DNA of 63,487 nt, counting the filler, from Octopus bimaculoides (taxonomy: Eukaryota), in the NCBI RefSeq assembly GCF_001194135.2. It is 5 parts of 4 records of this genome, joined end to end, with 100 filler letters (N's around TTAATTAATTAA, not from the genome) between each part and the next. Parts side by side here need not be neighbours in the genome. Positions count along the whole stretch, not along the records: positions 32,662 to 61,137 come from NC_068982.1; 4 more parts are not named here. One strand, 5' to 3'. Shown in pieces: positions 32,662 to 52,505 of this stretch. Positions within the stretch are counted from its first letter, which is position 1; every line of letters begins with the position of its first letter. The notes beneath the pieces are model-generated. The model saw nothing but the letters and a program-made list of their open reading frames with translations. It ran no database searches and was not told the DNA's origin. The translations under genes and the position numbers were made by a program.

Positions 32662-33000
32662 ATGTCAACGAAAGCCAGGTACAGAGGTTTATCCTTAGCT
32701 AGGTATTTCTCCTGCAGCTGTCTCACTAGAAATAAGGCATCAGTAGTGCTTTTACCTGGCACGAACCCAAACTGCATCTCATCTAAATTGATTCGCTCCC
32801 TAATTAGTTGGGCTATGACCCTCTCTGTAACTTTCATAACCTGATCTAACAGCTTGATGCCTCTGTAATTATTTGTATCTAAAGCGTCACCTTTACCTTT
32901 GTAGCAGTTGACTATGATGCTGCTACACCAGTCATTGGGTATGACTCCTTCGTGTATCACCTGGTTCGTAATACGGGTGACTAGGCTATAGCCAACACTG
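32662..33000 (-). mobile_element. RTE-clade LINE RT fragment
   Basis: IPNDWCSSIIVNCYKGKGDALDTNNYRGIKLL...QFGFVPGKSTTDALFLVRQLQEKY...LYLAFVD. Confidence 0.88.
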
Positions 33001-33002
33001 CC

Positions 33003-35525
33003 ATGAAAACAGCCACTTATGTTTATATTGCAGGGGATTTCAATTTCCCTGAGATTGACTGGGAGGCCTTCCGTTGGCCACAAAGTGCAGATGATTTCCT
33101 TGAGCTAGTGCTGAATTCAAATTGGTCCCAATTCGTTACCTCCCACACAAGAGATAACAACACTTTGGATCTGCTGTTTACCACTTCTCCTGAAACAATC
33201 ATTAGTGTCACTACTGAAGAACCTTTAGGTGACTTTGATCATTCCATGATCATGGCCAACTTGTCTCTGATTGGTTGTAACAAAAACCATCTTCAAACTG
33301 CCCGCTTTGACTGGAACTTATTGTACTGTGCTGCGACGCCCAAACTGGCTCAAATTTTATGTCTATGGAGATGTGAACACTATACTTCAGAACATTCTGA
33401 ATTCAATGTGGACGGCATGTGCAGCATCGGTACCATGCAAGCACGAAAAACCACCCAATAGTGCAATTTAGGAGACTGCAACAGTCCAACTTGCCAGGAA
33501 AGAACACCATAATGTTGAACAGGAATACAAAATGTACAAATCAGAGATCAACAAGAAAAAGCGCAATAGATCATCCAACCATCTCAAGCAGGTGACAGAA
33601 AAGGCAGTGCTTGAATTCGAACAGCGCATAGCAACCAACCCTGACAGCAAAGTGTTCTGGAAGTATGTACATTCAAAGCAGAAGCCTCACTCGCCAGTTG
33701 GTCCCCTTCACAATCCCCATACAGGCCATATTACTGACAATCCCAAAGAATGTGCAGAAATTATTGCTGGATGCTATGCAGGCATCTTTACTGTCGAAAA
33801 TAAAAATGTTCCATATCTATCACCTCTGACACCGGACTCTATAACTACTATGAAATTTACACCAGCAATGCTACAATGCCACCTTAAGAATAAATGCAAC
33901 TATGCCTCACTTGGTCTCAATGGTGTTACATACCTACTTCTCAAACACGGTGGGTACTTTCTTCTAAACCAACTTTCACTATTCTTTCAATTGTGTCTTG
34001 ACAATAGTGTTATTCCAGAACAGTGGAAAACTGCCAGTGTTATTCTTCTGTTCAAAAAAGGTGACCGCACATTGCTTGTCAACTATCACCCTGTCAGTCT
34101 TACTAGCTGTATTGCCAAACTGATGGAATCCTGTGTCAGAGAAACCCTCTGGCACTTCTGGAAGTCTCACAGCCTCATCCAGCTGTCGCAATTTGGATTT
34201 ATTCCTAACTCCAGCTGCTGTAATCAACTCATCGAGTTTCTTGAGGACATTACCTGAATCACTGATGGCAACTCCTGGGTGGATGTTGTTTACCTGGACT
34301 TTGCTAAGGCTTTTAATTCTGTGCCATACAAAAGACTTATGGTGAAACTCTTTGCAATGGGTGTAAGAGATGATCTCTATAACTGGTTTCAGTCCTTCAT
34401 TATCGGCTGAAAAGAGGTTGTCACAGTTCTAGGACAGCACTCTTCATCCTATGGGATGACATCTGGTGTACTACAGATCCCTGTTCTTGGCCCCCTTTTA
34501 TTTGTTGCATATATTAATGACATAGATGCCAACTTAAAGAATGCCACAGTGCTGAAATATGCAGATGACATCAAGCTGTACCTCAAAATAAAGAGGACAG
34601 ATCCTGTACACTATAGATCTTTATTGCAATCAGACCTGGCCACAATGTAGCAATGGATCATGGACTAGCAACTCAAACTGGCTGTGGACAAATGTACCAC
34701 CATGCATTTTGGGAGGAAAACCCCAGCGTCTACTTACATCCTCCACAACACTAATCTCAAAAAGTCTTCTTGTGAATGTGACCTGAGCATTATTGTTGAC
34801 AGCGATTTGCATTGTACAAAACACATTGCTAAAATTACCAAGAAGGCTGAGGGTGTCCTGGCATCACTTATCAAGTCCTTTGTGAGCCACTCTCTGGCTA
34901 TCTATCTGAGGCTTTATATACCTATGGTGCGGCCTCACCTTGAATCTGCATCACCAGTCTGGAACCCCTATCTTGCCCAGGATATTAATTGCCTGGAAAC
35001 CGTTCAGCGAAGTGCAACCAAGAGAAAACCCTCCATCAGGCATTTGCCATATTCTGAACACCTTACTTCCCTGGGCATGGATACATTGAAACTCTGACGT
35101 CTGGCAACTGACTTGGCAGACACCCATAAAATTATTAACCATCTTACTAACAATAGCTCTGAGTGCCTTTTCAAACTCCACCTGTCTAACACCCGTGGGC
35201 ATGTTTACAAAGTCAGAAAACAGCACAGCTCCCATGACTTTCGGAAACATTTTTTCATGCTAAGAGTTACTGAAGTATGGAACAAACTGCCAGCATCAGT
35301 TGTTAGTTGTCAGAGCACTGCACCCTTTAAAACTTCCATGCTTCCTGAGATTCACCAACACTACACCTGATTTTCTGCCCTCCATACACACACAAGCATG
35401 TATCTGACACAAACACTGTTTACTTTCCAGACATTTGTACAATACTGCATATGCTTTATATGCACTTTTGACAAGTTGTTGTACACCTGAGCACTGTATA
35501 CAATAATTTCATTATTATTTTTATA
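33003..35525 (+). mobile_element. CR1-clade LINE, 5'-truncated ORF2 with stops and frameshifts
   Basis: APE end GDFNFPEIDW; RT motifs NYHPVSLTSCIAKLME, YLDFAKAF, VLGPLLFVAYIND, YADDIKL; C-terminal VRPHLESASPVWNPY and TRGHVYK; 3' UTR ending in an (att)n tail. Confidence 0.92.
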
Positions 35526-35555
35526 TGAGAAGGACAGATACCGAACAGTATAGAT

Positions 35556-35790
35556 CTTTCCTGCAATCGGACATTGACACAATGCAACAATGAATCATGA
35601 ACTGAAGCTGTGGACAAGTGTACCATGCATTTTGGGAAGAAAAACCCAGCATCCACACGCTCTCTCCACAACACTAATATCAAGAAGTCTTCTTGTGAAT
35701 GAGACCTGGGCATTACTGTCAGCAACGATTTGCACTGGACATGGCACATCTCTAAAGTTGTCAAGAAGGCCCAGACATGAATGTGTCTGT
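35556..35790 (+). mobile_element. Second CR1 fragment
   Basis: Diverged repeat of about 34660-34850 (ctgtggacaagtgtaccatgcattttgggaagaaaaacccagc). Confidence 0.75.
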
Positions 35791-36479
35791 GGCTTATGAT
35801 TGGTGAAAATTACCCAAAATTTGTAAACTTTAAAAAGATTTATTGCGAAAATAAATTTCAAAGCAATGATTAGCATATAAAACTATATCATTACACCAAA
35901 TATGAAATCAATTCAAGTAGGAATTGAAGAGACTGAAAATTGGCAGCCAAACAGAAAATATCCCAATTCTTTTCAAATAGTCATATATCAGACACTACAA
36001 TAGCATGTTGTGAGAGAAAAAAAAAAGGAAAGGAAAAAAAGCATCAATGCCACACTTAAGTGCTTCAATTGGTCACACACAAGGTTCAACGGAACCTAGT
36101 ATAGAGAGAAATAGATTGATGGTGATAGAGAGTTGTCAATTTAAAAGTGAGTTATTTCTCATAGCAAATTGTTTTTTCTTCTTCACTATTATTTACAGAT
36201 TACCTTCTCTTTGAGATGCAAATTCAAATTCATTTTTGTCAAGGACACAGTTTCAGAGTCTTTCAGGGGTCATTAATATGTATATAACCACATACACTCA
36301 AATATATATATATGTGTGTGTGTGTTTGTGTGTGGAGAGAAAGAGTAAAATAGCTAGTTGTAAAATCTCAATAAGAGATGAGAGTAGTAACTATATTAAC
36401 AAGTAAAGTTAATCACCACATCAATGTGGTTGTTCCATGTTACTACTAGTTTAACCCCAGATCTGTCTCGAACATTATC

Positions 36480-36720
36480 ACCGGTCTATTTGAGCATATA
36501 AATGACAAACTTAGCTGGTGCAAAATGAGTAAGACACGATATGGTAAATTTGCCTCTGCAATTCTTCAGAATCACACTGTAAAAGACCCATATGAATCAG
36601 TATCCATTCTTGGGCATCAGAAGTGCAGCAAAAATTAAAATATCTAAGTTTACTGGAAAATGGCACATGATTTGAAATTAACAAAACCCGACTAAACCTA
36701 AAAGCTCAACGTGAAATATT
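36480..36720 (+). mobile_element. Possible degenerate PLE endonuclease C-terminus
   Basis: Frameshifted SAILQNHT...SILGH...KLKYLSLLE...KPxLNLK pattern. Confidence 0.3.
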
Positions 36721-37510
36721 CCGCGACCTGCTTGCTTAGGTCTCTTTTTGATGTATTTACGCACCATACCGTTGAAGAGAAGAAATTATGGAAATTAGTC
36801 ATTACTTATTTTGCTTCAATTTAGACTTTTTTTTTAATGAAAATTATCAAATTAAAGATTAGTGTAGGAAAAAAATTGATTTGGAATCGAATAGAGAAAA
36901 AAATATTGACTGTTAAACATCAAAAATTATCCAGATATATTAACATCAATCACAATTGGGTCAAAGTTTGATTGAATATCATAGTACCGGCTGCACAACA
37001 ACTTATGGTAATCTTCCAGTATAGGGAAATAACAGTCAAACTAAAGCGTTTGACCCGAGCTCAAAAATAAAAAAATAAATTAGTGTAATAGGTGTAAAAC
37101 AACTTGCTGTGAACGAATATGAAGAATGCGCGCTCGCGAACGGGTGGGGTGAGGAGAGTACGGATAATACTAGTAAGACGTTAAGTTATTTCCCTTGTAT
37201 TCTTATTTACTTTTTTTTACCTCCCGAAACTGGAAGATTNNNNNNNNNNNNNNNNNNNNNNNNNNNNNNNNNNNNNNNNNNNNNNNNNNNNNNNNNNNNN
37301 NNNNNNNNNNNNNNNNNNNNNNNNNNNNNNNNNNNNNNNNNNNNNNNNNNNNNNNNNNNNNNNNNNNNNNNNNNNNNNNNNNNNNNNNNNNNNNNNNNNN
37401 NNNNNNNNNNNNNNNNNNNNNNNNNNNNNNNNNNNNNNNNNNNNNNNNNNNNNNNNNNNNNNNNNNNNNNNNNNNNNNNNNNNNNNNNNNNNNNNNNNNN
37501 NNNNNNNNNA

Positions 37511-37550
<40 letters not shown>

Positions 37551-37626
37551 CGGCAGTGTCCTAGCATAACCAAAAACTTTAAAAAGAGATTAAAGATTTA
37601 CACACACGTATCTCTGTATATATATA

Positions 37627-38709
37627 TTAGTCTTTAACCGACTCTGCCGTCTCTGTTATTTTATATAATTGTATGCAGTCTGCTTTGAATTTCACTATCC
37701 GTGGCTTAAACGTTTTATGCGTTTCTAACATTTCAAAAAGATCCTTCATTCCAGTTTCCTTTGACAAATAAACCAGAGTTTTAAAAACCTTCATAAACAA
37801 AGACCTGGGATATGCGATCCAGATTTTTTCAAATATATCAGCACTTGCTTGGCTTAAATTATAAATGTCAAGAAGATTCGCTTTAAAATCCCTCTTATCC
37901 AAGTCAGTTTCTGCTATCTTCCATAAAAGCTTTTCAGTATAGATTTGTTTCCTGGTATCTTCAACAACTAATTTCCGATTCAAGGCCTTATCATATATGT
38001 GTGTAGCGTAAATGCCTGCCGATGGTAAATATTGGAAGGCAAACTTCTTAGGGGCTTTTCTTAATATTTCATTGATCATGTTATCCAGCTGATAATTCTT
38101 CATGTCAACAAGCGAAGCTTTATTGCACTCTTTAAGCGAACAGAAATTTCCAAGATAATCGAAGTAACGTTCAGGAGTTTTTTTCTCTTCCCATCCGAAA
38201 ACTAGCTTGTTTTTCTCAGGGAAACCCTCCTTCCAGTTTTTCTCGGTTTTATCCAAATCGTTGTAGTCAACAATTACCTCTTGTGACCACTCGTCAAATT
38301 CCTTCTTAATTTTCTCAGCGCATTGAGTCTTAGCCATGTTGAAGAATATTTCTATCAACGTCTCGACTGTCTTTTCGTCTCCATTATGTCTATTAATAAT
38401 GAAATTTGCGAAAAGAGTTAGAGCCATTTGTGATATATTTGAATAGTATTTTTTTTCTAAACGCCAAAGTATTTCGGAATCATAAAACATATTAACTCCA
38501 AGTTTCACAGCATCTTCCAGGTTATTGAAGTGTTCAGAAAGATCTCTCAAGCGTTGTTCTGTAAAGAATGGAAGTGAAGTATGATCGAATGTTGAATTAA
38601 ATCCGTTCCAGTAATCATCTCCTAATTTTTTTAAAATCTTCGGATTTTCCTTCCAAAACCGTCTTCGAAATCTCTCCATTGTGACTCTCTGTCCAGTTTG
38701 ACCCGGCAT
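37627..38709 (-). CDS. Intronless 360-aa ORF of unknown family
   Basis: Uninterrupted 1083-nt ORF in non-repetitive sequence, with aatcATG start (A at -3) and a Lys/Glu/Leu/Phe-rich, helical-looking composition. No transposon or enzyme motif recognised. Confidence 0.7.
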   Translation of the reverse strand: MPGQTGQRVTMERFRRRFWKENPKILKKLGDDYWNGFNSTFDHTSLPFFTEQRLRDLSEHFNNLEDAVKLGVNMFYDSEILWRLEKKYYSNISQMALTLFANFIINRHNGDEKTVETLIEIFFNMAKTQCAEKIKKEFDEWSQEVIVDYNDLDKTEKNWKEGFPEKNKLVFGWEEKKTPERYFDYLGNFCSLKECNKASLVDMKNYQLDNMINEILRKAPKKFAFQYLPSAGIYATHIYDKALNRKLVVEDTRKQIYTEKLLWKIAETDLDKRDFKANLLDIYNLSQASADIFEKIWIAYPRSLFMKVFKTLVYLSKETGMKDLFEMLETHKTFKPRIVKFKADCIQLYKITETAESVKD

Positions 38710-38834
38710 GATTAACGTTGCAAATTTGGTAGTTGTAATTTGCTGAGATAGCGAAAAAATTCGAATAACTTTAGGATAAATCTAAGTTATATAAACTTTG
38801 TTTCTTTACGAATGCGGAAGTAAAATCGATGGTT

Positions 38835-39130
38835 GCAAAAGCGCTAGAGCCTCGGGGAGAAAATGCTTTACATTTGCACTGTGAGTACGAATCCTACCGA
38901 GGTCAACTCTCCTTTTATCCGTTTTGGGGGTCAATAAAATAAAAGATCAGTCTCGTACTGGGGTCGATTTGGCAAACTGGAAGAATTCTTTAACGTCGGT
39001 GAAATATTTAAGCGGTTCAAATACCACGGAAGTCAACTTTGCCTTTTATCCTTTCGGAGTCAGTCACGTACTTGAGTTGTTTTAATTAACTAACCTGAAA
39101 AACTGCTGGCCTTGTGTCAAAATTTTAAAC
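38835..39130 (+). mobile_element. Two diverged SINE family A-related copies
   Basis: aatcctaccgaggtcaact...ggggtcaataaa and ggttcaaataccacggaagtcaactttgcc. Confidence 0.6.
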
Positions 39131-39170
39131 AATTATTATAATGAAAAAAACTTTTACGGTATTTACTTGC

Positions 39171-39202
<32 letters not shown>

Positions 39203-39439
39203 CAAGTAAAGCAGTTTAAAAAGTTATGGCATAGTCGTAGTTGTCGGGTTATGAGTTATGTCCCCTTAATCAGACACTTCTTCAAACTTTTTTTTTACTC
39301 CTGTCCCAACTTTATTGCTTTATCTGACAGCAAAATGAACAAGAGACTGTGAAACAGAAACGGAATAAATATCCTAAAGCTTCTGTTCAAAGGCACCTAT
39401 GTGTCGTATATTTTCGTCAATCTTTATATCATTACGTCG

Positions 39440-40205
39440 AGATACATCGCCGAATCCAATCCCCAGTGGCACAGTGAAGATTTGTAAGACATTCCAATAT
39501 TTTTCCATGAGATTCTTATTTGAATAGAAATACACACTTCAGTGTATGCATCGAGATACTCAGACACATACACATACATAAATCATATACATGTACATAC
39601 GTACACATGCACGCACATTACATAAATGCATGCATGCATACATACATACATTACATTAGATACATTATATCCCACCCAGAAGGGTATACATTCGCTATCC
39701 AGGAACAGGAGATAGCTACTAAATACCTGATATACAAGAGGGACAAAGATACCACCTTTAAAAACAAAGAATATTCGTAGAACACCCCAATAAAATCATA
39801 AATTCGGTGCAAGCATAACAGACCTGATATTATTCTGTGGGACAAGAAATAAAAAGTTATGCACTATTGTAGAGGTCACCTGCCCAGCAGATGTGAATGT
39901 ACAATTCAGGAAAAAGAGAACATTTATGGCGAATTCAGGCGGAACTTACAGCTCTTGTACCCTGACAATGAATTCTCATCTGTACCTATCATCATAGGTC
40001 CATTAGGTTATGTACCGATAAATTTGCATAAAGAAAGAAGAAAAATTACAAATACTCGGTTTCACGGGAAAAGAGCAAAAGAAACTAACACGGATTCTCC
40101 AAACCCAGTCTATGGTAGCACAGTGAAGATGTGTAAGACATTCCAATATTTTTCCATGTGAGATTCTTATGTGAATAGATGTACACACTTCGGTGTATGC
40201 ATCGA
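39440..40205 (+). mobile_element. R4/Dong-clade (RLE) non-LTR 3' fragment, preceded by a duplicated 3' end
   Basis: EGYTFAIQEQEIATK, RPDIILWDK, IVEVTCPAD and VPIIIGPLGYVP (PD-D/ExK-like RLE). 39466-39560 matches 40117-40205. Confidence 0.8.
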
Positions 40206-41039
40206 CAGTTCAACCAACACGCGAAATCAACCACATATTTACAAACACCAGGAACTGTCTTAACTCACTGTGTCAGCAATAATATCATTACAAAAGTGAA
40301 CAAACAGCTGGAAAGAAAGAAGTCTGGAGAAGTGCTGAAAATTGTGCAGTATTAGAGGAATTTAGTTACAACCTGATTGGATTACAAGCAAGTATTCGAT
40401 TCTGTTTGCCACTCGTGGACAATGCTGTCTCAATTCATAGGGTCACTGAGCAGTTGCTCAGGAGCCCTATGAATTTTCGGACTCAATTCTAATTTATGCA
40501 TACTATGAGTTGCAGTCAATAAATAAATATAGTGATGTGTGAAAAGAATAAGATGACGGAAAGGGTAAAGGAACAAACGAAAGAGGAGGAGGAGGGGCTT
40601 GAGGAAAAGAAAAAAAGAACGAAAGAAAAGCAGATGGAGCTTAGGATAGAAGGAAGTAATGAATGCACGAAGAAAGAAAGAAAGGAAGGAGGGAGTATAA
40701 GTCGGATCGACTTTTCTACAGCAGCTTAATATCAGTATTTGACGTTGTACTTCTAATGTAAATAAAGCATAAACATATCTGATTTGGCAGAAAAGTACAT
40801 CCCAGACATGAGGGATTTCTTAAGTATCCGTCTCTTGTCCTCTAAACCACTGGGGTCCGTGGACAGCAAATACTTTTTATGGGGAATTTGATTTTATATA
40901 TGTTTTTTAATCGAAATCTTTTAATTGACAATAAACCTATTTGTTAAATACTGTTAAATAAACAAATGTAAAAATATGTTATTTTAAGCAAATATTTATG
41001 TATAAATTTCATAAGCGTTTATAAGGGTTATGGTTAGGT

Positions 41040-41266
41040 TTTATACGTATTTCCTCTATCCATCTGTTCAAATCTTTAGGAATAATTCCTAATGCACCTT
41101 TAACTACAGGAATACATTTTACCTGCACTTTCAGTTGTCTCTAACTCAATGGCTAGCTCCTGATATTTTGCTATTTTCTCTAGACTTCTCATTCTGACTT
41201 TCTCATCATTTGGAACTGTAAAGTCAATTATCTGGCACTTTCTATTATTTTTGACTGCTGCTGCTG

Positions 41267-41311
<45 letters not shown>

Positions 41312-42830
41312 AATTGCGCCTATTACTCCGTCCGTCTGAATGTTGAAGTCCCTCAACATCTGATATTTCTTACTATCTAGTACTTTACTAGGTTCATGTT
41401 CATACCATTTATCAGTATAGTCAAATTCTAGATTTTTACATAACTCCAAGTGGATTACTCTCCCTAGGTCGTCATATCATTGTATTCTTTCTGTTCCATC
41501 TTGCTACATTCACTTACTATATGAGTAACACTTTCCTCTTTTGATTTCTATAATTTACATTGGGCATCCACCTAGTTTTTGTCTATTTTGGCTTTTATCC
41601 AATTAGTCCTCAATGTTTGAACTTGGGCTGCTACTAACAAACTTTCTGTCCCCCTTTTCAACCTTCCTTCCTGCAACCATAACCGTGTCTCAGTACTACT
41701 ATTTCTTGCAATTATCTTTGGGAATCTACTATGCAAAGCGTTCCCTGCCAGTAAGATAATCTTTCTTCTTTTTTTCTGTTTTTTAACTTTTTTTGGTTTG
41801 GCTATATCTTACTGTCACTATATCTTACTGTAACACCTCTTAATAAACTTTCTTCACTGTTAACTACATAGGAGTATATATCTACTCTAGCTAACTCCAC
41901 GCAGTCTTCTACTGATTTTAACCCTCTCCCACCTTCCTTTCTAGGTAAGTACAATGTTGCTACTCCTGCCATTGGGTGGAGTTCTCCATTCATATTGAAT
42001 TCCTTCCTAGTTTTCCTGTCTAGATTTTCTAATCCAGATTTTGTCCAATCTACAAAAGCTGTTGAGTATCTTAGTAACAACACTGCCCAATTATTTACAC
42101 CCGTCACTAGATTCGCACCATTTAGCTTTGACTTCATTAACTTCCTCACTCTTCTGATGTACTTCTCAATTTTCGTTTTAATTTCTGTAGTTAGTACTCT
42201 TTCAGATTCTAATACTCCTAGACACTTATAACTCCTCTTCTTTCAATGTCTGGCCATCTTGTAATAGGATGCCTTCACTGTTGACTACCTGTCCCTTTTT
42301 CGTGACAAATATTACACAAATTCCATGCCTATATCTTTGCTGAAGAGTCTTACAGTTTGTATTAAGCAATCTATCTCTTTTTTAATTCTTACTAAAAAGC
42401 TTCAGATCATCCATGTAAAGCAAATGGTTTATATTTCCTTTACTATTTCTGAACTGATACCCGTTCCTTTGCCTTCCTGGATATTAAACTGAGTGGGATC
42501 AAACATAAGACAAATAGTAAAGGAGATAACGAGTTCCCTTGGAAAATTCTTCTTTTGATATTAACTTTCCCCAGGACTGTATCACCTGATTAGAGATCTA
42601 CTTCCCATTTCTTCATGTTAAATCTAATTAGTTTTCTTGTCTGTTATACTGAATATACTCAAACGTTCACTTATCCATGTGTGAGGTCATGTCATAGGCT
42701 TTCTTAAAATCCATCAATGCTATTGTTAGAATTTTTCTAGCTTTTACTTCATTTAGAATTGCTTTGTCTATATATAATAGATCATGCGTTCCTCTAGCCT
42801 TCTTCCTGCAACCTTTCTGTTCTTCTGAGA
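41040..42830 (-). mobile_element. R4/Dong-clade non-LTR retrotransposon, 5'-truncated and degenerate
   Basis: EEQKGCRKKARGTHDLL, NHLLYMDDLK, LYLPRKEGGRGLKSVEDC, ESVTHIVSECSKM, IIDFTVPND and IPVVKGALG. Confidence 0.88.
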
Positions 42831-44899
42831 GCAAATGGTAGTGGTGGTGGTGGTGGTGTTTAGCTTCAGGTCAACCCTGATTGAACAGATTTGTGATTGT
42901 AGGCATTCTAACCATGAATATTCCATCATTTTCCTAAACAGAGAACACCCAGTACCATATCATCCAGTATGCTCTTCGTTTCTAACACAGCAGGGAGATT
43001 TGAGTATAACCACGTACAGGTTCCTTTGTTGGCTTGACTCAGGACACGTTATTTAAACTTTATGTCAGCTCCGAGCTGACCTAAGATCAAAAGCATTTCA
43101 AACTTGTGTATCCAATATTTTAAGACACAGTGCATCCAGGGCCATGTTGCGTTGGTTTACATATTTAAGACAGCAGAGTGTGATTTAAAGAAGATTTTGT
43201 TGCTATTTCTCTCAAACATTCACAACACAGATGATGTACTTTAATAGTGTTCTAACAACTAAATAATTTACGGTTTACAATATTATAGCATTTAAAATAA
43301 CTTTGTTATTCAGTTGGTCGATTAAGACAATTGATACTTCTCATTCACAATGCATGGCAATAAAAATAAAGCCCTCGAAGCCTAATTAAAGAGGAAGTCA
43401 AGCCAAAGACGGAACTTCTGAGTACTCATAAAACTTGCTAGAAATAGCTGCCAAAATTCTCTCAAATCACACTATCTTTAGGAAGGAAAGATTATCTTTT
43501 GTTTAGACATTGGATAATGTGCTCATAGATGCACAATGTCTGAACAAAAGATAGGATAATCAGGGCTTGGATGCCTTTGTGATTCTGTTCGTTGCCCCCT
43601 GGCTAAACAACATTTTATATTATAGTTATGATGTATATCTTTTTTTTAATTTCTTACTTTCGGTGTTAATAACTTTGGGATCAATAGATTTAAGCTTTAT
43701 TTAACGCTGCAGAAGTAGTTTTCTTGAATCAAATCTTTATCTAGTACAATGTAAGCATACATAAAGTTTATGGATTGGATTTTTTTTTTTACCTCTTAGT
43801 AGAATTGGACGAAAATTATTGTTTAAAAGAATACTTTGAAGACGGATATGTTATATACAAATTAGATTGTATTTAGATTGTGACACTTATGCTACAAAGT
43901 TTGTAGTCAAGCATGCTAACTGATTTCATTACAGTCTACTTGTTTAAGAATGTCTAAATTTGAAAAGAAAGTAGAGCAAAATACTAGGTAAGGATTCGAA
44001 CCCAACCGCAAGATATTCAGTTAGGGATTACGATTAAGCCATCACAGTTTCATGTGATTGATCTATAAATCGGTCAATTAACAGGAAGCTTTGGCGTGAC
44101 TTGGCTCTTTGGATGATCTAAAAGTTGCCCTTTTTTCGCAATATAAAAACCGCTTGGCACCTAACTAAGCCAGATGGTTTCAAGCATCCGCGTAGATCAC
44201 CTTGGGCACACACAGAAGGCAGACCGCTAATACTAGACCACGTCAGACATTCGGACAGAATACCTCGAGCAAGAAACGATTTCAGACACATACGTTGGAT
44301 TCTAGTTAGCCTTCTACAAGATACAGCGTGGTTCTCTCCTCCTAGTCGGCGGTTATATTATCAGTACTTTTCTTTTGTAGACAGTTAACGCAGTAAATCA
44401 TATCCATCAATAAATATGTTAAAAGTTCGTGAGTCGCTTCATTTATTATACGCGCAGCTAGCTAGACCACAGGGTGATGGTCTTTAACAAGACAACACAC
44501 ACCAACAAACGACCATCACAACAATGAAGATCAAACATCCTTACGTCTCTAGTAAGAACCACGATGAAAAGTGTCGTATAAAAATAATATTGAACAGATC
44601 GTCAACTTGTTTAAGAAAAAGCTAAATTCGAAAGGAAAGTAGGCAAAAATGTTAGTAAGGAATATAGTGAAAAATGTCGCTCAAAAATACTATCGAACAA
44701 ACAGTATTTAAAATTATGTCGGCCGCAAATATACGTCATAGGAAAATTGTGACGTTGTGAATTAGATTGTAGACGTACTGTATGGAAAACATTAAGAATT
44801 GGGGGGAAATGGAACGGGTGTTACATCACCTTTTCTATGAATTAGTAGTTCGTTTATTTATTTATTAATATATATTTTTTTCTTAATGTAATTACCAAA

Positions 44900-45095
44900 A
44901 TGCCTTCCCCTCAGAGAAAACGAAAGGTAACACCGTTTACCACACTGCTTAATTTTGTGCCTTATAAGAAACCACTGAATTATGTTCATTCTGATCTAAA
45001 ACAGAGCACGAAAAGTAGCACAAAAAGTGGAAGCAATCAACCTACATATCGTCAAATTCTAAGTGACCACAACTATTCCTTGATAAAATCTTTAG
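44900..45095 (+). CDS. TSSK: TSSK-family kinase, probable first coding exon
   Basis: ccaaaATG start. MPSPQRKRK...RQILSDHNYSLIKSL followed by G|GTgagt donor (phase 1). Splices in frame to 52506 to give YSLIKSLGSGSYSKVKLA, the kinase subdomain I glycine loop. Confidence 0.8.
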
Positions 45096-45184
45096 GTGAG
45101 TTGTTTTTTTTTTTTTAAGAACAAACTTATGTACATTTCAAGAACAAACTTCTGTACATTCACAACGCAGTCATGTGTTCAAAT

Positions 45185-45222
<38 letters not shown>

Positions 45223-46539
45223 ATATACGCACAAACACAGTATGTACACATGTAAAAATACAAAAACGTATACTAACATACAGATAAATTAATAAATGAA
45301 AGAATGTTCGTGTGAATGCACACAAGCATCCATCCATACACATCCATCCATACACACGAATACACACATTTGTTTATATAATAATTCAACTACGGTATTT
45401 CATAGTTTGTCGCTAATTCAATTCTTAACCAAATGGAAACTAACATTGTTGAAGAGGACTAGTCACTAGCTACATTTTGGCATGAAAAAATTGTGATTTG
45501 GTCCAGTAGAAAAAAGTTTACATCAAAATTTGTAGCAACGTTATGAGAGAGTAAGTAACGCCACCAATCAAGTTTAGATCTAAACAACTTTTCTTTATTT
45601 TAAAAGCAAAATATATTTTATCTTAGATTCAATGATAGAAGAAAGCATGGGGAATTTTATAGTTTTGATCCCATGCAAGAAAAATTTGTATCAAAATCGT
45701 TGTGAGGTAAAATATCATGAAAAAAATATAAGTAAGGCAAAGTGTAATTAACTTTTTCCTTTATTTTAAAAACAAACTATATTTTAATTAAGTTTAAATG
45801 ATAGTGCTTAATTCGAGGAATTTCATGCAATCAATTTCATGCAATGCAGTTTTAAAAGAAAGTTATGAGTGTTTTTTTTTCTCGTATTTGAGGGTGATAA
45901 TATAGTTCTATACTTTTTCTGGATATAGTTCTAGGGGGCTTTTAATATATATATCACCGGCATCATTGAGGTAAGGAAAAAATTATCAACGCCACCGCTA
46001 ATTGACACATTTGAAACATTATTAATTAGCAAAACCTGGAAAAAAACATGGGTTACTTGGAAAAATACGAGCAAGGGAAATAATATTCTTAAGATTATAA
46101 ATGTGAAAAAGTACAGGACAGGTTATTACACTTGGAAAAGTTCAAGACAAGTTATTACATCTGGTACCACCATTTTGTTAAAATATTGACACACTAGAAT
46201 ACTTTAAAAAATGAGAGCCAGAAGTACCAATATAGCTAAAGTTTTATGCAAAGTATAATAGTATATATGGTAGGCAAATTCATTGTGTAAAAAATAGGCA
46301 TTGAGTCAAGACTAAAAATGTGAAGACTTGGCAATAACTTAGGCAATAACTCAAGCAAATCTTACTGTGAATTTGTTATAGGTAGATTTTACTGTAATAT
46401 GTAACTAATTCTTTTTATTATTCTATTTATTGTACTAAATAATTTTGTTCCACTATCATTTTTTTACAACCTATTTTCAAATTTCTAATTTTTAATTAGC
46501 NNNNNNNNNNAAAATAATTCAATTAAAATATTTTTTGCA

Positions 46540-47404
46540 CTTTACCATTTGCCAATTCTGGCCGTTTTTCTTTGATTGCAGCCTCCAGTTTCATTAGTTG
46601 TTGACAGTAAACATCTGAATTGATCATTTGGTTCCCTGAAAGCAGCTCAAAATACACAACACCTTTCTAATCCCACCAATTTTTTCTTTATTTCAGCTTT
46701 CGATTGGGGTCTGCTGGTTCATTACGCTTGGACCATGACGTTTTCGATTAATGTTATTGTAGAGAATCCATTTTTCATCACCAGTGATTATTCATTTCAC
46801 AAAAAGGTCGATTTCATTGCGTTTGAGACGCATATCGCAAATATTGATTTGCTGTGTTAAGTGATTCTCTTTCAATTTATGTGCAACCCAAATATCGAGC
46901 TTCTCAACGAATCCGAGACATTTTCAGTGATTTTCAATTGTTGTGTGTGATAAATTTAACCTCTCTGCAACATCTCGCACAGTCATATGACAAGCAGATT
47001 CAGTTATAGCTTTGATTCGGTCATCATCAACTTCAGTAGGTCGACCAGAACGTTGGTCATCTTTGAGTGAAAAATCACCAGAATGAATTTTTTGATCATT
47101 TCTGACATGTGCGTTCTGTTAAGTAATCAACACCATAAACTTCACATATTTCTTTGTGAGCCTCAGCAGCTTTCTTGCCTTTACGCAAAATATGGTGAAC
47201 ATATTCATTTTTGCACTTCATGTTAAAATTAACACTGAAGTAGCAGTTGTAAACAAAATTATGTGCAATTTGCTTCTAAAGTAAGCTAAAAGTTACGGCT
47301 ATCAAATGTCAAAAGGAAAAAATCATAACATTGACAAAAGTCATTAAAAAAAATCGTAACTCTCTCTATTTGCGAAAAACGAAATTACTTTCTTGTCAAC
47401 TCAA
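46540..47404 (-). mobile_element. mariner transposon remnant (5' TIR plus N-terminal and catalytic-start region of a pseudo-transposase)
   Basis: KGKKAAEAHKEICEVYG, DDQRSGRP, KLDIWVAHKL (WVPHEL motif) and IITGDEKWILYNN, with stops. TIR ttgagttgacaagaaagtaatt next to a TA at about 47405. Confidence 0.9.
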
Positions 47405-48572
47405 TATATATATATAAAGGATATGAAGGGTATTGGGGTCAACCAAACCCTAAAGATACGGTAATACCGAGTAAGTGCTGTATACTGACTAGTTTTTCCC
47501 CTGTTGTTGTAGCAACATGAGTGGGGAATATAACATAGGTCGTGTATTAGCGTGTGTATGTATAAAGAAAGAAAAGGATAAAGAGACCAATGGCAAAGTT
47601 GGAATTTTATTTTATGTATAAAGTCTTACAGCTGTTTACAAAATAAACAACAACACAAATAACTACGCAGAGGCAGCCATGGTTGAAACAAGAACAAGAT
47701 CAAGAAGCATTATTAAAAGAGAAAAGAAGCATGGTCATTCCTTNNNNNNNNNNNNNNNNNNNNNNNNNNNNNNNNNNNNNNNNNNNNNNNNNNNNNNNNN
47801 NNNNNNNNNNNNNNNNNNNNNNNNNNNNNNNNNNNNNNNNNNNNNNNNNNNNNNNNNNNNNNNNNNNNNNNNNNNNNNNNNNNNNNNNNNNNNNNNNNNN
47901 NNNNNNNNNNNNNNNNNNNNNNNNNNNNNNNNNNNNNNNNNNNNNNNNNNNNNNGTGGACCGACTCTACTACTATCACCACCACCCCCTTAGCTATGCTA
48001 GTGGTTCGAATTAACCACCTATTCATCTCAAGTGATGTTAAAAAGTTTTTCTCTTTTTTTGTATTTCTCAGAAAATTCTTCATCATCTTGGTTCTTATCA
48101 AGTTCATGTTTGAAATCATGTCATCTTTGAACTGTTTCAGGACTGCTGCTTTTCGCATTGCTGTTGATCACTTCTTCGTCTTAACTAACCACTATCATCA
48201 TTAGAAACTGTCGATTCAGTAACTGTCGATTCGCTCAGAATTTTTCTTTTCTACAACTAATAACAATTACGTAATTTTAAATTTGATTACCATCCGATAT
48301 TTAACATTTATTAAGTACATTACTTGGTTCTCTCCTCCTTGACAGCCCCCTTTGTTAACAGATACCAGTTTCTACGAATCCTTTCAAGAACAGATGATTT
48401 CTTATTGATGACAGACGTAATTTCAATTGTGATTGTTACGGTTAACATTTCCTCCCCTCCTCTCTCTCTCTCTATCTTTCTTTCTCATATACACACTCAA
48501 GCACACATAATGCACACATATACACACATACACGTACGCACATACACACACTCATACACATACACACTTAAA

Positions 48573-48611
48573 GACAGACAGACAGACAGACAGATAGATA
48601 GACAAACAGAC

Positions 48612-48647
<36 letters not shown>
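48573..48647 (+). repeat. (GACA)n(GATA)n compound microsatellite
   Basis: Direct read. Confidence 0.95.
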
Positions 48648-50354
48648 TGGTAGTAGATATATACATCATAACGTATAATCATATATCAAATCTTTCTCAA
48701 TCTGCGGAACAGTGAAGACAAATCATACATCTTAAGTGTGGTTTTATACACTATATTTTGAAATTTATTAGTGATTTTCTAAAGTGATACGGGGGGNNNN
48801 NNNNNNTACTCGTCAAATATCAAGGGAAATTTTTCGTGCAATCCAATAGAGTTCACAATTTTGCTGTTCTAAAGAATAAAATGGTTGTTGCTAAATATGT
48901 GGCTAGCAATATCTATTTAATGTTAGGCTCTCAGACATTCCTTAATACAGTTGTAAAAGTTCACTGGTCTTTAGTTTACAATAACAATTTTGATTACGTC
49001 TTGTACATTTCAGTAATTCACAAGTCTTTCCATTGTGCCAGTTAGAATACCTTCCCTTAATGACTTATTGTACAGGATAGCAAAAGGATGATTATGAACA
49101 TCAGTTAGTTTCTGTCATAAGTATGAATGTCACCAATCCGGATTAATGCTTTATCTGTGAGTAACACCTTATATTTCATACGATATCGATATCAATTAAG
49201 GTTGTTCTTCAAACAGGTAATCATGGTTGAGTCATAAATCTTTGATTCCAGGACATTTCTAAGGAACTGGTTCGAAGAGAGTGTTTTATCTCCTGGAGAA
49301 GCAGCGAGGCATATTCGGAAGTTTTAATCTGGTCTTCAACACAGATTGGACGTACATTCAGAAAGATATGGAATTCTATTCTATGTTTGAGGTTATATTC
49401 ATCTCAAATCTACGACCAGGTTGCGCTGTGTTAATTAGATCGCTTGTATAAGTACAGTATAGCAAATGATTACAATTATGAGTACAAAATAGATGACATA
49501 GACTGATAGAACGAGTTTGTTGAGAAATATAATACTCCAGAGACATCATCCGTATGAAAGACAGAAATTAAGTTAGTGTTAACAAAATTAATGCAAGGAA
49601 CATTAAAAAACTCAGTCTGAAAATCCCAGATTGCCAGTTACGTATTTTTTAGATACCTTATTCACACAATTGTGGAAGTTTTAAAACTGCCATGCTTGTC
49701 TTGCTTAGTGTCCAATTGGTAAGACAGCTAATTGTTTTTATCGTCCTTCTTTTGTATTAGACTTTTTTCTGATAGAGAGCCATGTTCATCAAATCAAAGT
49801 GTATCTGTATACTATTGCTGTTTAGTTGATTTGACATGCAACACTCTCAAAACAGTGTTGTATCAATAAATATCTAGTCCTATACAAAAACAGCTTTGGA
49901 AATTAGCAGGGAAGGGAGGGAAAACCTGAAAAAACATTGACTGGCCTCCACTTCATACATCTACTTGCGTAGAAAGAGTTGTCTGTACACTCTAGTACAA
50001 TGATTCTCTCACAAATCCTTGGCCACCATCCCACAAAATATTAATGAATTCTTTTTTTTTGTGCTTTCCTACTTTTTTTTTATTAATGAGAAAACAAAAT
50101 AGTTTGCATGCACATAAGTCTTCCTTTGCCATGATGATTTACAAGCTTTAAAACTCGGGAAACATGGATTTTATTAAATTTTGCAATTTCTCTGCTCCTT
50201 TACAATCTTCACAGCTCCATGCTATGATAGACACTGCACTAATTTCATCTCACGTTTCTTGATATTCTTTGGTCACCCCTCTTAACTTACTCACCTCTAT
50301 TATATAAAACAGTAAAAGAATAAAACGACTTTTGCAGGTTTTCATATTAGAGTG

Positions 50355-50505
50355 AAAGCGGCGATCTGACAGAATCGTTACCGCGCCAGAGAAAAATGCT
50401 TAACGGCACTTCTTCCGAATTAACTTTTACAATTCAAATACCACCGGGATCGACGTTGCCTTTCATATTTTCGGGGGCCATAAAATAAGTACCAGTTAAG
50501 CACTA
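50355..50505 (+). mobile_element. SINE family A-related copy
   Basis: gcggcgatctgacagaatcgttacc...attcaaataccaccgggatcgacgttgcc...aagtaccag. Confidence 0.7.
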
Positions 50506-50574
50506 TCTTCACCTTGATTTTTTATTTAGGAGGATTGTATGTCTATTTTTAGGCCTTCCTTCCAGACTATTCGT

Positions 50575-50940
50575 GGGTTTATTATTATTATCATTTCATA
50601 TGTGCTTTACAGATTAAACTGTTGGAAAAGAAATATCCCTAACAACAAGTAACTTTAGATGCCAAGAACCCTATTAAGTATTCTAGCTGTCCTTAATAAC
50701 ATTGTCTTCTGGAACTGTACTAAACTAGATTTTATGCTTATTTCCTCTATTCATCTGTTCAAATCTTTAAGGATAGTTCCTAATGCACCTATATAACTAC
50801 AGGTATGCATTTTACTCGCATTATTCATGATTGCTGTAACTGAATGGTTGTGTCCTGGTATTTTGCTATTTTCTCTATGCCTCTCATATTGACTTTCTCG
50901 TCATTTGGAACTGTAAAGTAAACTATCTAGCACTTTCTAT
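50575..50940 (-). mobile_element. R4/Dong 3'-end fragment
   Basis: Homologous to 41040-41250 (ctattcatctgttcaaatctttaaggatagttcctaatgcacc). Confidence 0.75.
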
Positions 50941-50954
50941 ATTCTGAGCCAAGG

Positions 50955-51595
50955 AGCGGTGGCGTTGTTGAGAAATGACCCGAAAAAGGGGGATTGTATT
51001 GACAACTTAGGCGCATAACTCTGCTGAATGCAGAGTTCAAAATCTTGGCCAAGGTGTTAGCTACGAGGTTAGCGTTTGCCGTCTGGTAGGGGAGGCACAG
51101 ACATGTGCCATCCCGAAAACCTCTACCTCATGCAATACATCATTGAAAAATTAGCTAAAGAACTTCGCACGGATGGGACCCTGATCAATTTAGATTAGTC
51201 TAGCGCTTTCGATAGAATCGACCATCTATACCTGGAGGTGGTTGTCAAGGCAGTTAGTTTCGGGCCTGTATTCAGGGACTGGATCGCTGCAATGCACAGC
51301 GATATCTATTCAATGGTCAACGTAAGCGGTCACCTCTCAGAGCCGTTCAACATCATGCGCTCGGTCCGGAAAGGGTGTCTCCACTTGTCTCGCTTGTATG
51401 TACTGACTCTGGAGCTACTACTACACAAACTGGAGGCGTTGCAAGGCATCTGCGTGACCTAGAATGTTGGAAATGCGTGTCGGCATAAGCCGACGACATC
51501 ACTGTAGTGGTGTCGGATCATAAACACATAGAAATGATCGGCACCGCTCTCAGAGACTATGAGGCAGTTTCAGGAGCAACGATTAACCAATAAAA
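50955..51595 (+). mobile_element. Tx1/L1-clade RT fragment
   Basis: ITLLNAEFKILAKVLATRL and SAFDRIDHLYL. DNA homology to 8830-8990 (ctggatcgctgcaatgc...ttcaatggtcaa). Confidence 0.82.
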
Positions 51596-51956
51596 ATCAA
51601 TTGGCTAGTAGTAACATTCAACTGCCATTTTGATGTGACAACTCATTAACAGTTTAGTATACGTTACTACTCTATCTCTTCTTGAGATTTTATAACAAGC
51701 TACCTTGCTTAATGATATATAATATATTCCATTATTGTAACAATGAAGTAAAGTAAATGCAACAATGTGTTCTATTTGCTACGAAGACTTCACCGATGTA
51801 ATCTTTGTATAACAAATGAATACTATTGTATAACAAATGAATACTATAAGTGGTTCTTTAAGCAATACTTTTGTTATCCTGTACCATAAGTCATTAAAGG
51901 AAAGTACTCTATCGGCACAATGGAAAGACATGTGAATTGCTGAAATGTGCAAGACT

Positions 51957-52350
51957 CTTTTATCTTTTACTTGTTTCAATCATTTGACTGCGGCCATGCT
52001 GGGGCACGCCTTGAAGGATTTTAGTCGAACAAATCGACCCCAAGACTTATTTTCATTTTTTTTTAAATTTTAAACCTGGTATTTATTCTATCTGTCTCTT
52101 TGCCTAAACCGGGGCACGTGAACACACCAACACCAGCTGTCAAGCGGTAGAGGGGGATAAATACATACACAAAGATACATACTCATTCACACACACAGAC
52201 GAACTTCTTTCAGTTTCTGTCTCTCGAATCCACTCACAAGGCTTTGGTCGGCCCGAGGCTATAGTAGAAGACAATTGCCCAAGGGGCCACACAATGGGAT
52301 TGAACTCGGATTCATGCGGTTGAGAAGCAAGCTTCTTACCACCCAGCCAT
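51957..52350 (-). mobile_element. SINE family B, near full length, in the TSSK intron
   Basis: Same modules as 27545-27900. Confidence 0.85.
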
Positions 52351-52505
52351 GTTGTTTATAATCTTATTTTACAAATTTATCCTTTTTCATTGCATAATTC
52401 CCTTTTCGATATTGCTTTAAATTGACAAGCTTCTAAGTTCTTTAAAAATACGAAAATTCCTGTATAACCAGCTACTCTTCTAAGCATTTTATTCTCTGTT
52501 TCCAG

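What the first reader, a model, noticed from the sequence alone, without database searches (positions are those of the whole stretch)
37627..38709. Intact intronless 360-aa orphan ORF among decayed repeats
Seen: the longest clean ORF in the window, with no stops, good ATG context, a possible acceptor (ttttttcgctatctcAG, exon starting 38742) and a TATATAA element near 38790 upstream. No poly(A) or TSD marks a recent retrocopy, and I recognise no motif. Inference: a lineage-specific gene, an endogenous viral or horizontally acquired gene, or a domesticated element gene. It is antisense to HYDIN and divergent from the TSSK start about 6.2 kb away, so it may be testis-expressed.
Basis: partly seen in the sequence, partly recalled or inferred. 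Interest (0 to 1): 0.72.

Follow-up and report, generated by a model that had tools for sequence, protein, structure and literature searches.

The report
Fast-evolving octopus-only death-fold gene
The 360-codon reading frame is a real, single-exon gene found only in octopuses; it probably carries a death-domain-like signalling module and changes its protein sequence about twice as fast as the surrounding non-coding DNA, but it is not a virus or transposon gene.

Summary
The ORF at 37627..38709 (-) is confirmed: 360 aa, 384 codons stop to stop, against at most 198 in composition-matched random sequence. It is not a transposon, viral or horizontally acquired gene. Pfam, PHROGs, PDB sequence and viral fold searches give nothing, and an exhaustive profile search of 1.84 billion proteins finds only its own family. 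That family has five database proteins, all from octopods (Octopus vulgaris, an unnamed third species, Argonauta hians). They form two intronless paralogue groups. Group A, which includes the window gene, is soluble. Group B carries a C-terminal hydrophobic tail anchor and is under purifying selection. The window gene is the positional orthologue of an O. vulgaris 'hypothetical protein'. Flanking DNA differs by 8%, but the ORF differs by 20% at all three codon positions. The frame nevertheless stays open in three species (neutral simulation: 1-34 of 20000). AlphaFold models of both groups place a six-helix bundle at residues 51-143. It superposes on FADD, Fas and PIDD/RAIDD death domains (TM 0.70-0.74) and coincides with a sub-threshold Pfam Death hit. 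Best reading: a lineage-restricted, rapidly diversifying cytosolic death-fold adaptor. Expression and function are untested. HYDIN, the TATA box and the splice acceptor are not supported.

The parts
37627..38709 (-). Complete single-exon coding sequence, 360 aa plus stop. It is the group-A (soluble) member of an octopod-restricted two-paralogue family.
   Evidence: ORF listing. Homologues P0001-P0005. Positional orthology with O. vulgaris locus L001. Open frame retained in three species despite 20% divergence.
38572..38709 (-). N-terminal region, residues 1-46. A predicted helical hairpin (helices 11-21 and 23-35) and a variable linker.
   Evidence: AlphaFold model. Homologous to the N-terminus of group B. 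54% amino-acid identity to the O. vulgaris orthologue.
38281..38559 (-). Predicted death-domain-like six-helix bundle, residues 51-143. This is the slowest-evolving part of the group-A protein.
   Evidence: Six helices: 51-58, 64-73, 78-88, 92-106, 112-124, 128-143. Foldseek hits to the PIDD/RAIDD complex, Fas, FADD, ankyrin and TNFR1 death domains, with target-normalised TM up to 0.71-0.74 and rmsd down to 2.3-2.4 A for the best hits (PIDD/RAIDD complex and FADD chains) and lower for the others. Pfam Death PF00531 matches residues 52-136 to profile positions 2-84 of 86, E 0.068, below the cut-off. 81% amino-acid identity to the orthologue, omega 0.74.
37993..38217 (-). Family-specific conserved core, residues 165-239. 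It holds the invariant motifs FGW..K.TPERxFDYLGNFxSL and AP.xFxFQxLPSA..Y.
   Evidence: Invariant columns of the six-sequence alignment cluster here. Model confidence is 86-89 pLDDT. No match to any Pfam or PDB family.
37630..37992 (-). Rapidly diverging C-terminal helical region, residues 240-360. It ends about 25 residues short of the point where the group-B paralogues carry a hydrophobic tail anchor.
   Evidence: 70-78% nucleotide identity to O. vulgaris, against about 91% in the flanks. Codon positions 1+2 differ at 26%. No hydrophobic segment in group A, against Kyte-Doolittle 2.4-2.95 in group B.
38710..38790 (-). Proximal upstream region, probably the 5' leader or core promoter. It is better conserved in the third species than the rest of the upstream DNA.
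   Evidence: Three-species alignment A2, columns about 720-785. A function is inferred, not shown.
38860..39080 (-). Two adjacent repeat-derived (SINE-like) fragments upstream of the gene, present at the orthologous place in all three species.
   Evidence: Best-conserved block of alignment A2. Weak copies (76-80%) occur elsewhere in the piece at 50433-50474, 55047-55269 and 57469-57719. No Rfam family matches it.
37510..37626 (-). 3' flank: TA/TG-rich sequence and an (AT)n microsatellite, running into the assembly gap 37240..37509.
   Evidence: Sequence. An (AT)n run also directly follows the stop in O. vulgaris and the third species. No AATAAA is seen before the gap.

Best explanation
The ORF is a functional, intronless, protein-coding gene. 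It is the soluble, fast-evolving paralogue (group A) of a two-gene family that, as far as public data show, exists only in octopods.

Shown: it is the positional orthologue of an O. vulgaris hypothetical protein. The frame is kept open in three species although the coding DNA has diverged 2.5 times more than its flanks. A sister paralogue (group B) lies about 52 kb away in O. vulgaris, is also present in Argonauta, is under purifying selection and ends in a hydrophobic tail anchor that group A lacks.

Predicted: residues 51-143 fold as a death-domain-like six-helix bundle, followed by a family-specific helical region with two invariant motifs.

Inferred mechanism: the protein acts as a cytosolic death-fold adaptor or regulator. 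Its death-like domain makes homotypic contacts, most simply with the membrane-anchored paralogue or another death-domain protein of a cell-death or innate-immune pathway. Its rapidly changing C-terminal half is the surface engaged in an evolutionary conflict, with a pathogen or in reproduction.
For: The ORF is real and beyond chance.

The family is limited to five octopod proteins in 5.8 billion clusters and in an exhaustive profile search of 1.84 billion representatives.

Synteny with O. vulgaris is colinear over window 36503..43808.

Flank substitutions are 340/4233 = 8.0%. ORF substitutions are 204/1017 = 20.1% (Fisher 9e-26). Codon positions 1+2 differ at 20.2% (p 1.6e-19 against the flanks). 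Four-fold sites differ at 7/66 = 10.6%.

Under neutral simulation the frame stays open in 34 of 20000 runs with 110 changes and in 1 of 20000 with 218 changes. Six of eight gaps inside the ORF are multiples of three, and the other two (13 + 2 nt, 28 nt apart) restore the frame together. In the flanks only 12 of 36 gaps are multiples of three.

Group B has omega 0.34 against Argonauta (p 1e-9), and its ORF is more conserved than its flanks (9.3% against 14-22%). Group B is an intact 384-aa single-exon ORF in O. vulgaris and has a tail anchor.

The death fold appears in both models as the only compact, high-TM, high-probability hits. It has the same borders as the weak Pfam Death match.
Against: No expression data were available. 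Neither this protein nor any homologue from the RefSeq-annotated O. bimaculoides or O. sinensis appears in the protein collections. This may mean low expression, or only that single-exon orphans were not called.

The death-domain call fails the curated sequence test: 13.7 bits against a 22.6 cut-off, in one of six members. A profile of the domain finds no death domain among PDB sequences. Foldseek E-values are 0.5-5. The two models share one shallow six-sequence alignment.

Pairwise codon-model omega is 1.26 and not significantly above 1. Mismatches are equal at the three codon positions. Synonymous change may be higher inside the variable patches: pS 0.19 against 0.088, on small counts. Gene conversion or local hypermutation could therefore contribute to the excess divergence.

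The proposed partner and pathway are inference only.
Confidence: 0.55

Rival explanations
1. The excess divergence of the ORF is not adaptive. It comes from patchy sequence exchange (gene conversion) with unsampled group-A paralogues, or from a locally raised mutation rate. The gene is still coding but under weak constraint.
For: Mismatches are equal at codon positions 1, 2 and 3 (18.9, 20.6 and 20.6%). Replaced codons are clustered (runs test z = -3.55). Identical-amino-acid codons in variable neighbourhoods show pS 0.19, against 0.088 in conserved ones. The maximum-likelihood omega is not significantly above 1. 57 of 132 replaced codons differ at 2-3 bases.
Against: Four-fold sites (7/66) and synonymous sites of identical-amino-acid codons (16/126.5 = 0.126) sit near the flank rate, not at 20%. 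The divergence excess stops at the ORF borders: the upstream 890 nt differ by 9.2%. Only one group-A copy per species is on record.
Confidence: 0.25
2. The death-domain resemblance is accidental. The protein is a wholly novel all-helical protein, either arisen de novo or diverged beyond recognition, and its activity has nothing to do with death-fold signalling.
For: The Pfam Death score is below the cut-off and seen in one of six members. The domain profile finds designed helical proteins, UBA and TRF2 segments, and no death domain, at E 0.02-3. Foldseek E-values are not significant. Small helical bundles are easy to superpose.
Against: The Pfam alignment covers 83 of 86 profile positions with the same borders as the predicted six-helix unit. 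The death-domain hits are the only ones with target-normalised TM of 0.7 or more and Foldseek probability 0.8-1.0. They are death domains rather than CARD, PYD or unrelated bundles, and they recur with the Argonauta group-B model.
Confidence: 0.3
3. The ORF is a non-functional relic: an unexpressed or decaying frame drifting neutrally (omega about 1) that is still open by luck.
For: Omega is about 1 in every group-A comparison. The gene is not annotated in the source genome. No expression evidence is in hand.
Against: A neutral frame would differ by about 8%, like its flanks, not by 20%. The frame is open in three species although simulation keeps it open in at most 0.2% of runs per pair. All length changes preserve the frame. 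The death-like domain and the core motifs are conserved across paralogues that are saturated at silent sites.
Confidence: 0.07
4. The gene derives from a mobile element, an endogenous virus or a horizontal transfer (a domesticated element gene).
For: It is intronless, sits among decayed LINE and mariner remnants, and has no relatives outside one animal order.
Against: No match to any transposon, viral or prokaryotic protein by sequence (Pfam, PHROGs, 1.84 billion representatives) or by fold (BFVD best E 0.56, probability at most 0.21). No terminal or target-site repeats. GC content equals that of the surroundings (0.354 against 0.367). Single copy at a conserved syntenic place, with a second paralogue 52 kb away. 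The nearby element remnants are separate insertions.
Confidence: 0.05

Closest known systems
Death-domain adaptors (FADD, RAIDD/PIDD, Fas and TNFR1 death domains; Pfam PF00531)
   Same: A predicted six-helix antiparallel bundle of about 93 residues superposes on solved death domains, at TM 0.71-0.74 and 2.3-2.4 A for the best-fitting ones. The sequence pattern aligns to nearly the whole Pfam profile. Like adaptors, the protein has no enzymatic domain.
   Different: The sequence score is below the family cut-off. There is no DED, CARD, TIR, kinase, caspase or ZU5-UPA partner domain. The rest of the protein (about 220 residues) is a helical region with its own invariant motifs and no known relative. 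The distribution is limited to octopods.
Tail-anchored death-fold platforms such as MAVS (N-terminal CARD, C-terminal membrane anchor)
   Same: The group-B paralogues combine an N-terminal death-fold-like module with a short C-terminal hydrophobic anchor followed by basic residues. This is the same overall layout as a membrane-tethered signalling hub.
   Different: The resemblance is in architecture only. The module is death-domain-like rather than CARD, the middle region is structured rather than disordered, and there is no sequence similarity. The window gene (group A) has lost or never had the anchor. The comparison with MAVS rests on my own knowledge of its layout and was not tested here.
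Taxon-restricted, rapidly evolving genes of immunity or reproduction
   Same: Narrow phylogenetic range, no introns, amino-acid divergence above the local neutral rate, and in-frame length changes.
   Different: It is not a single-species orphan. It belongs to a two-member family that predates the split between Octopus and Argonauta, and one member is under clear purifying selection.
O. vulgaris 'Hypothetical predicted protein' P0001 (chromosome OX597815.1) and Argonauta hians Ahia01_000767100 (P0005)
   Same: P0001 is the positional orthologue (61% amino-acid identity, colinear flanks). P0005 is the group-B relative.
   Different: Both are uncharacterised database entries. P0001 is annotated from the second ATG, although the upstream in-frame ATG is conserved. 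The window copy itself is absent from the gene collections.

Membership tests
Death domain (Pfam PF00531, death-fold superfamily) | Sequence match to the family profile at or above the curated gathering score | tested here: not met
   13.7 bits against a cut-off of 22.6, E 0.068, residues 52-136 on profile positions 2-84 of 86. Only one of six family members gives any hit. A domain profile searched against PDB sequences finds no death domain.
Death domain (Pfam PF00531, death-fold superfamily) | Compact antiparallel six-helix bundle of about 80-95 residues | tested here: met
   The AlphaFold model has six helices within residues 51-143 at pLDDT 67-89. The group-B model has the same layout. This is a prediction from a six-sequence alignment, not a solved structure.
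Death domain (Pfam PF00531, death-fold superfamily) | Significant structural superposition on solved death domains | tested here: inconclusive
   Target-normalised TM 0.68-0.74, rmsd 2.3-3.9 A and Foldseek probability 0.8-1.0 for the best hits (PIDD/RAIDD complex 2of5 and FADD chains), but E-values of 0.5-5. The Fas, ankyrin and TNFR1 hits are weaker (TM 0.52-0.66, or 0.14 against the 509-residue ankyrin-B tandem; rmsd up to 7.9 A).
Death domain (Pfam PF00531, death-fold superfamily) | Homotypic oligomerisation with other death-fold domains | not testable with these tools
   No interaction data are available.
Tail-anchored membrane proteins | A single hydrophobic segment within about the last 30 residues and no signal peptide | tested here: not met
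   The window protein's highest 15-residue hydropathy is 1.35, inside the death-like domain. The C-terminus is polar. Group-B relatives do meet the feature (2.4-2.95 at residues about 360-378).
Transposable-element or retroviral ORF | Similarity to transposase, reverse transcriptase, integrase, gag or env families | tested here: not met
   No such Pfam hit. No relatives outside the family.
Transposable-element or retroviral ORF | Multicopy, with terminal repeats or target-site duplications | tested here: not met
   One copy in the piece and one per fetched locus. Two family members in the O. vulgaris protein set. No flanking repeats. Whole-genome copy number could not be counted with these tools.
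Endogenous viral element or horizontally acquired gene | Detectable homologue in viruses or prokaryotes, or foreign base composition | tested here: not met
   PHROGs, BFVD fold search and the 1.84-billion-protein profile search are all negative. GC 0.354 against 0.367 for the piece.
Processed retrocopy of a spliced parent gene | Poly(A) tract, target-site duplication, and an intron-bearing parent elsewhere | tested here: inconclusive
   No poly(A) tract or duplication. Both paralogue groups are intronless and no intron-bearing parent is known. An ancient retroposition before the A/B duplication cannot be excluded.
Octopod A/B family (this report; no public name) | Full-length alignment with the invariant motifs TPERxFDYLGNF and FxFQxLPSA | tested here: met
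   E 4.7e-125 to 2.5e-43 against the five members, with 58 invariant columns.

The most novel reading that the evidence does not exclude
Octopods have evolved their own death-fold signalling pair. One is a conserved hub anchored by its C-terminal tail to an organelle membrane (group B). The other is a soluble, anchorless duplicate (group A, the window gene) whose non-death-domain surface is being remodelled faster than neutral DNA, as a sensor, decoy or antagonist in a host-pathogen or reproductive conflict. This would be a lineage-specific innate-immune or cell-death module with a new effector domain, carrying the invariant TPERxFDYLGNF and FQxLPSA motifs.
Probability: 0.2. Interest if true: 0.65.

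Novelty: new variant of a known kind. Interest (0 to 1): 0.45.

Why it matters
Cephalopod innate immunity and cell-death signalling are poorly mapped, and many cephalopod-specific genes have no assigned fold. This locus offers a small, tractable family of two intronless genes with conserved synteny. It has a plausible death-fold module, a new conserved helical domain, and a sharp contrast between a constrained membrane-anchored paralogue and a soluble one that evolves faster than neutral DNA. If the death-fold reading holds, it adds a lineage-specific adaptor architecture to the death-domain superfamily and marks a candidate arms-race gene in octopus. It also shows that standard annotation misses or mis-models these genes. 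The window copy is not on record. O. vulgaris P0004 is modelled as a 228-aa spliced product where an intact 384-aa ORF exists. P0001 is started at its second ATG.

Tried and rejected
- Pfam on the window protein and on all six family members gave only sub-threshold noise (YgjP-like, PriCT_2, Death).
- PDB sequence searches with the protein, the family profile and a domain-only profile found nothing meaningful.
- PHROGs found nothing.
- The BFVD viral fold search found nothing: best E 0.56, probability at most 0.21.
- A second word-index homologue search with the family profile returned the same five proteins.
- Looking up the window protein by exact sequence found no record, so the source species and accession could not be identified.
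- Searching the paper library for the run accessions that hold the third species' contigs (SRR11869384-91) gave no paper. I could not tell whether those contigs are genomic or transcript assemblies, so I do not count them as expression evidence.
- Rfam on 36500..40500 gave only sub-threshold hits on TA/CA-rich sequence.
I scanned the longer stop-free frames instead.
- Nei-Gojobori dS (0.25) proved inflated by codons with several differences. I therefore used four-fold sites, identical-amino-acid codons and the flanks as neutral yardsticks.
- The pairwise codon-model test for omega above 1 was not significant.
- The splice-acceptor and TATA ideas were rejected because the motifs are not conserved.

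Full report
**Observation**

The minus strand carries an ATG-to-stop ORF of 360 aa at 37627..38709. The frame is open for 384 codons, 37630..38781. It is the longest N-free frame in the piece 32662..61137. The runner-up is a 261-codon retroelement remnant. Two hundred first-order Markov replicas of the piece gave longest frames averaging 131 codons, with a maximum of 198. An assembly gap (37240..37509) and an (AT)n run begin shortly after the stop, so the 3' end cannot be read here.

**What it is not**

- Pfam gives only sub-threshold hits. PDB sequences give nothing. PHROGs gives nothing. A fold search against predicted viral structures gives nothing: best E 0.56, probability at most 0.21.
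- An exhaustive HMMER profile search of 1.84 billion representative proteins returned only members of the gene's own family.
- No terminal or target-site repeats bracket the ORF.
- Its GC content (0.354) matches the piece (0.367).
- It occurs once in the piece and once in each related locus.

The transposon, endogenous-virus and horizontal-transfer readings are therefore not supported. The surrounding LINE and mariner remnants are separate insertions.

**The family**

Two searches of 5.8 billion protein clusters found five relatives, all octopod:

- P0001: O. vulgaris, 61% identity.
- P0002: an unnamed third species, from Logan assemblies of runs SRR11869384-91, 55% identity.
- P0003: the same third species.
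- P0004: O. vulgaris.
- P0005: Argonauta hians.

They fall into two groups. Group A is the window gene, P0001 and P0002. Group B is P0003, P0004 and P0005.

Group B ends in a hydrophobic segment followed by basic residues, with Kyte-Doolittle 2.4-2.95 over 15 residues. That is the signature of a tail anchor. Group A stops about 25 residues earlier and has no hydrophobic segment.

In O. vulgaris the two genes lie about 52 kb apart on chromosome OX597815.1, in convergent orientation. Both groups are intronless. The 228-aa spliced model P0004 hides an intact single-exon ORF of 384 aa.

The N-termini of A and B are homologous, and the start context GTTAATCATG is shared by three species. In O. vulgaris the annotated start is in fact the second ATG. 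The CDS is therefore complete in one exon.

**Orthology and rate**

Window 36503..43808 is colinear, in reverse, with O. vulgaris locus L001, so the window gene is the positional orthologue of P0001.

| Comparison (window vs O. vulgaris) | Differences | Source |
|---|---|---|
| Five flanking blocks | 340/4233 = 8.0% | |
| The 890 nt directly upstream | 9.2% | |
| ORF, all sites | 204/1017 = 20.1% (Fisher 9e-26) | |
| Codon positions 1+2 | 137/678 = 20.2% (p 1.6e-19 against flanks) | |
| Four-fold sites | 7/66 = 10.6% | |
| Synonymous sites of identical-amino-acid codons | 16/126.5 = 0.126 | |

The excess is concentrated outside the death-like domain. Positions 1+2 differ at 8% in residues 47-143, against 23-26% elsewhere. 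Nucleotide identity is 70-78% in the 3' half.

The frame is nonetheless intact in three species. Neutral substitutions simulated on the ORF left it open in 34 of 20000 runs (110 changes) and 1 of 20000 (218 changes). Six of eight gaps in the ORF are multiples of three. The other two (13 and 2 nt, 28 nt apart) restore the frame together. Only 12 of 36 flank gaps are multiples of three. This is strong evidence for selection on a protein product.

**Caveats on the mode of evolution**

- A pairwise Goldman-Yang model gives omega 1.26 overall, 0.74 for the death-like domain and 1.45 for the rest. None differs significantly from 1.
- Mismatches are equal at the three codon positions.
- 57 of 132 replaced codons differ at two or three bases.
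- Replaced codons are clustered (runs z = -3.55).
- Silent change in identical-amino-acid codons may be higher in variable neighbourhoods (0.19 against 0.088, on small counts).

Diversifying selection is the simplest reading. Patchy gene conversion or local hypermutation cannot be excluded, and I keep that as a rival.

Group B behaves differently. Its omega is 0.34 against Argonauta (p 1e-9), and its ORF is more conserved than its flanks (9.3% against 14-22%). The family thus pairs a constrained, anchored gene with a fast, soluble one.

**Structure**

The AlphaFold model of the window protein is all-helical (six-sequence alignment, mean pLDDT 74, pTM 0.69). Residues 51-143 form six helices.

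Against the PDB, the only compact matches with high probability are death domains: the PIDD/RAIDD complex, Fas, FADD, ankyrin and TNFR1. The best-fitting of them (PIDD/RAIDD complex and FADD chains) reach target-normalised TM 0.71-0.74, rmsd 2.3-2.4 A and probability up to 1.0; the Fas, ankyrin and TNFR1 hits are weaker. E-values are only 0.5-3.

The Argonauta group-B model (pLDDT 70) again picks FADD death domains, at TM 0.70-0.73 and probability 0.6-0.8.

The sub-threshold Pfam Death hit spans residues 52-136 on profile positions 2-84 of 86. Those are the same borders as the predicted six-helix unit.

Against this, the hit is below the cut-off and seen in one member only. A domain-only profile finds no death domain among PDB sequences. 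I rate the death-fold assignment at about 0.6.

The remaining 220 residues have no structural relative. They contain the family's invariant motifs FGW..K.TPERxFDYLGNFxSL and AP.xFxFQxLPSA..Y, modelled at high confidence.

**Mechanism**

Shown:
- A selected coding gene.
- An octopod-restricted two-paralogue family.
- Contrasting selective regimes in the two paralogues.
- Presence of a C-terminal anchor in group B and its absence in group A.

Predicted:
- A death-like fold.

Inferred:
- Group A is a cytosolic death-fold adaptor or regulator.
- It contacts the anchored paralogue or another death-domain protein through homotypic death-fold interaction.
- Its C-terminal half is the surface under conflict.

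The analogy of group B with tail-anchored death-fold hubs such as MAVS concerns layout only. It rests on my own knowledge, not on a test made here.

**Neighbourhood**

- Decayed LINE remnants lie at 32664..35094, with RT and endonuclease homology split over several short frames. A further RT remnant lies at 54056..54805.
- Mariner-like remnants lie at 46526..47275 (-).
- A TSSK-like kinase gene has a first coding exon at 44900..45095 (+) and a second at 52506..52807 (+). The splice sites and phase are consistent and the joined reading gives LGSGSYSKV. The best solved relative is TSSK6, E 5.5e-17.
- I found no HYDIN-like frame in the piece. The O. vulgaris gene table lists no gene spanning the syntenic 21 kb.

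**Novelty and verdict**

The family exists in databases only as 'hypothetical protein' entries. It has no Pfam family and, in the library searched, no paper. The window copy is not on record at all.

It is best described as a new variant of a known kind: a death-fold-like adaptor with a new conserved domain, restricted to one order and evolving unusually fast.

Interest is moderate (0.45). The evolutionary contrast and the candidate lineage-specific signalling pair are worth following up, but expression and function are untested and the fold assignment is only moderately supported.

Noticed in passing
window 44900-45095 (+) and 52506-52807 (+): TSSK-like serine/threonine kinase gene. The first coding exon ends at a GTGAGT donor and the second starts after ttccAG. 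Joined, the reading gives the glycine loop LGSGSYSKV. The best solved relative is TSSK6 (E 5.5e-17). The intron of about 7.4 kb holds mariner remnants and an N gap.
   Followed up: partly
L002 9926-11080 (O. vulgaris OX597815.1): The annotated 228-aa spliced product P0004 (gene range 10001-15938) appears to be mis-modelled. An intact intronless 384-aa ORF with a C-terminal tail anchor covers the same start region and matches the full-length group-B proteins of two other species.
   Followed up: yes
L001 9971-11038 (O. vulgaris): P0001 is annotated from the second ATG. An in-frame upstream ATG with the same GTTAATCATG context as in the window and the third species would add 10 residues.
   Followed up: yes
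window 38860-39080: Two adjacent SINE-like repeat fragments upstream of the ORF form the best-conserved non-coding block among three species. Weak copies occur at 50433-50474, 55047-55269 and 57469-57719. Whether they serve as promoter sequence is unknown.
   Followed up: partly
window 39447-39554 and 40096-40205: A direct duplication of about 110 nt (83-91% identity), spaced about 650 bp apart. O. vulgaris has a single copy of the segment (L001 about 9083-9239), so this is a local duplication or insertion in the window lineage.
   Followed up: partly
window 32664-35094; 54056-54805 (-): Decayed non-LTR retroelement remnants. Reverse-transcriptase and endonuclease homology is split over several short frames on both strands.
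   Followed up: partly
window 46526-47275 (-): Mariner/Mos1-like transposase remnants (HTH_48, HTH and partial DDE matches in separate short frames) inside the kinase gene's first intron.
   Followed up: partly
window 37510-37626; L001 11039-11090; L003 1860-1884: An (AT)n microsatellite directly follows the stop codon of the group-A gene in all three species. It coincides with the assembly gap in the window and with the contig end in the third species.
   Followed up: no
L003-L008 (Logan runs SRR11869384-91): Both paralogues of a third, unnamed octopod were assembled in several of eight consecutive runs. The 5' ends vary and the 3' end is shared. If the runs are RNA-seq, this would be evidence of transcription with a leader of 800 nt or more. 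I could not find the metadata.
   Followed up: partly
L001 5368-5808 (-): The O. vulgaris annotation calls a 146-aa FAM200/ZBED5-like (hAT-derived) fragment about 4.2 kb upstream of the orthologue.
   Followed up: no
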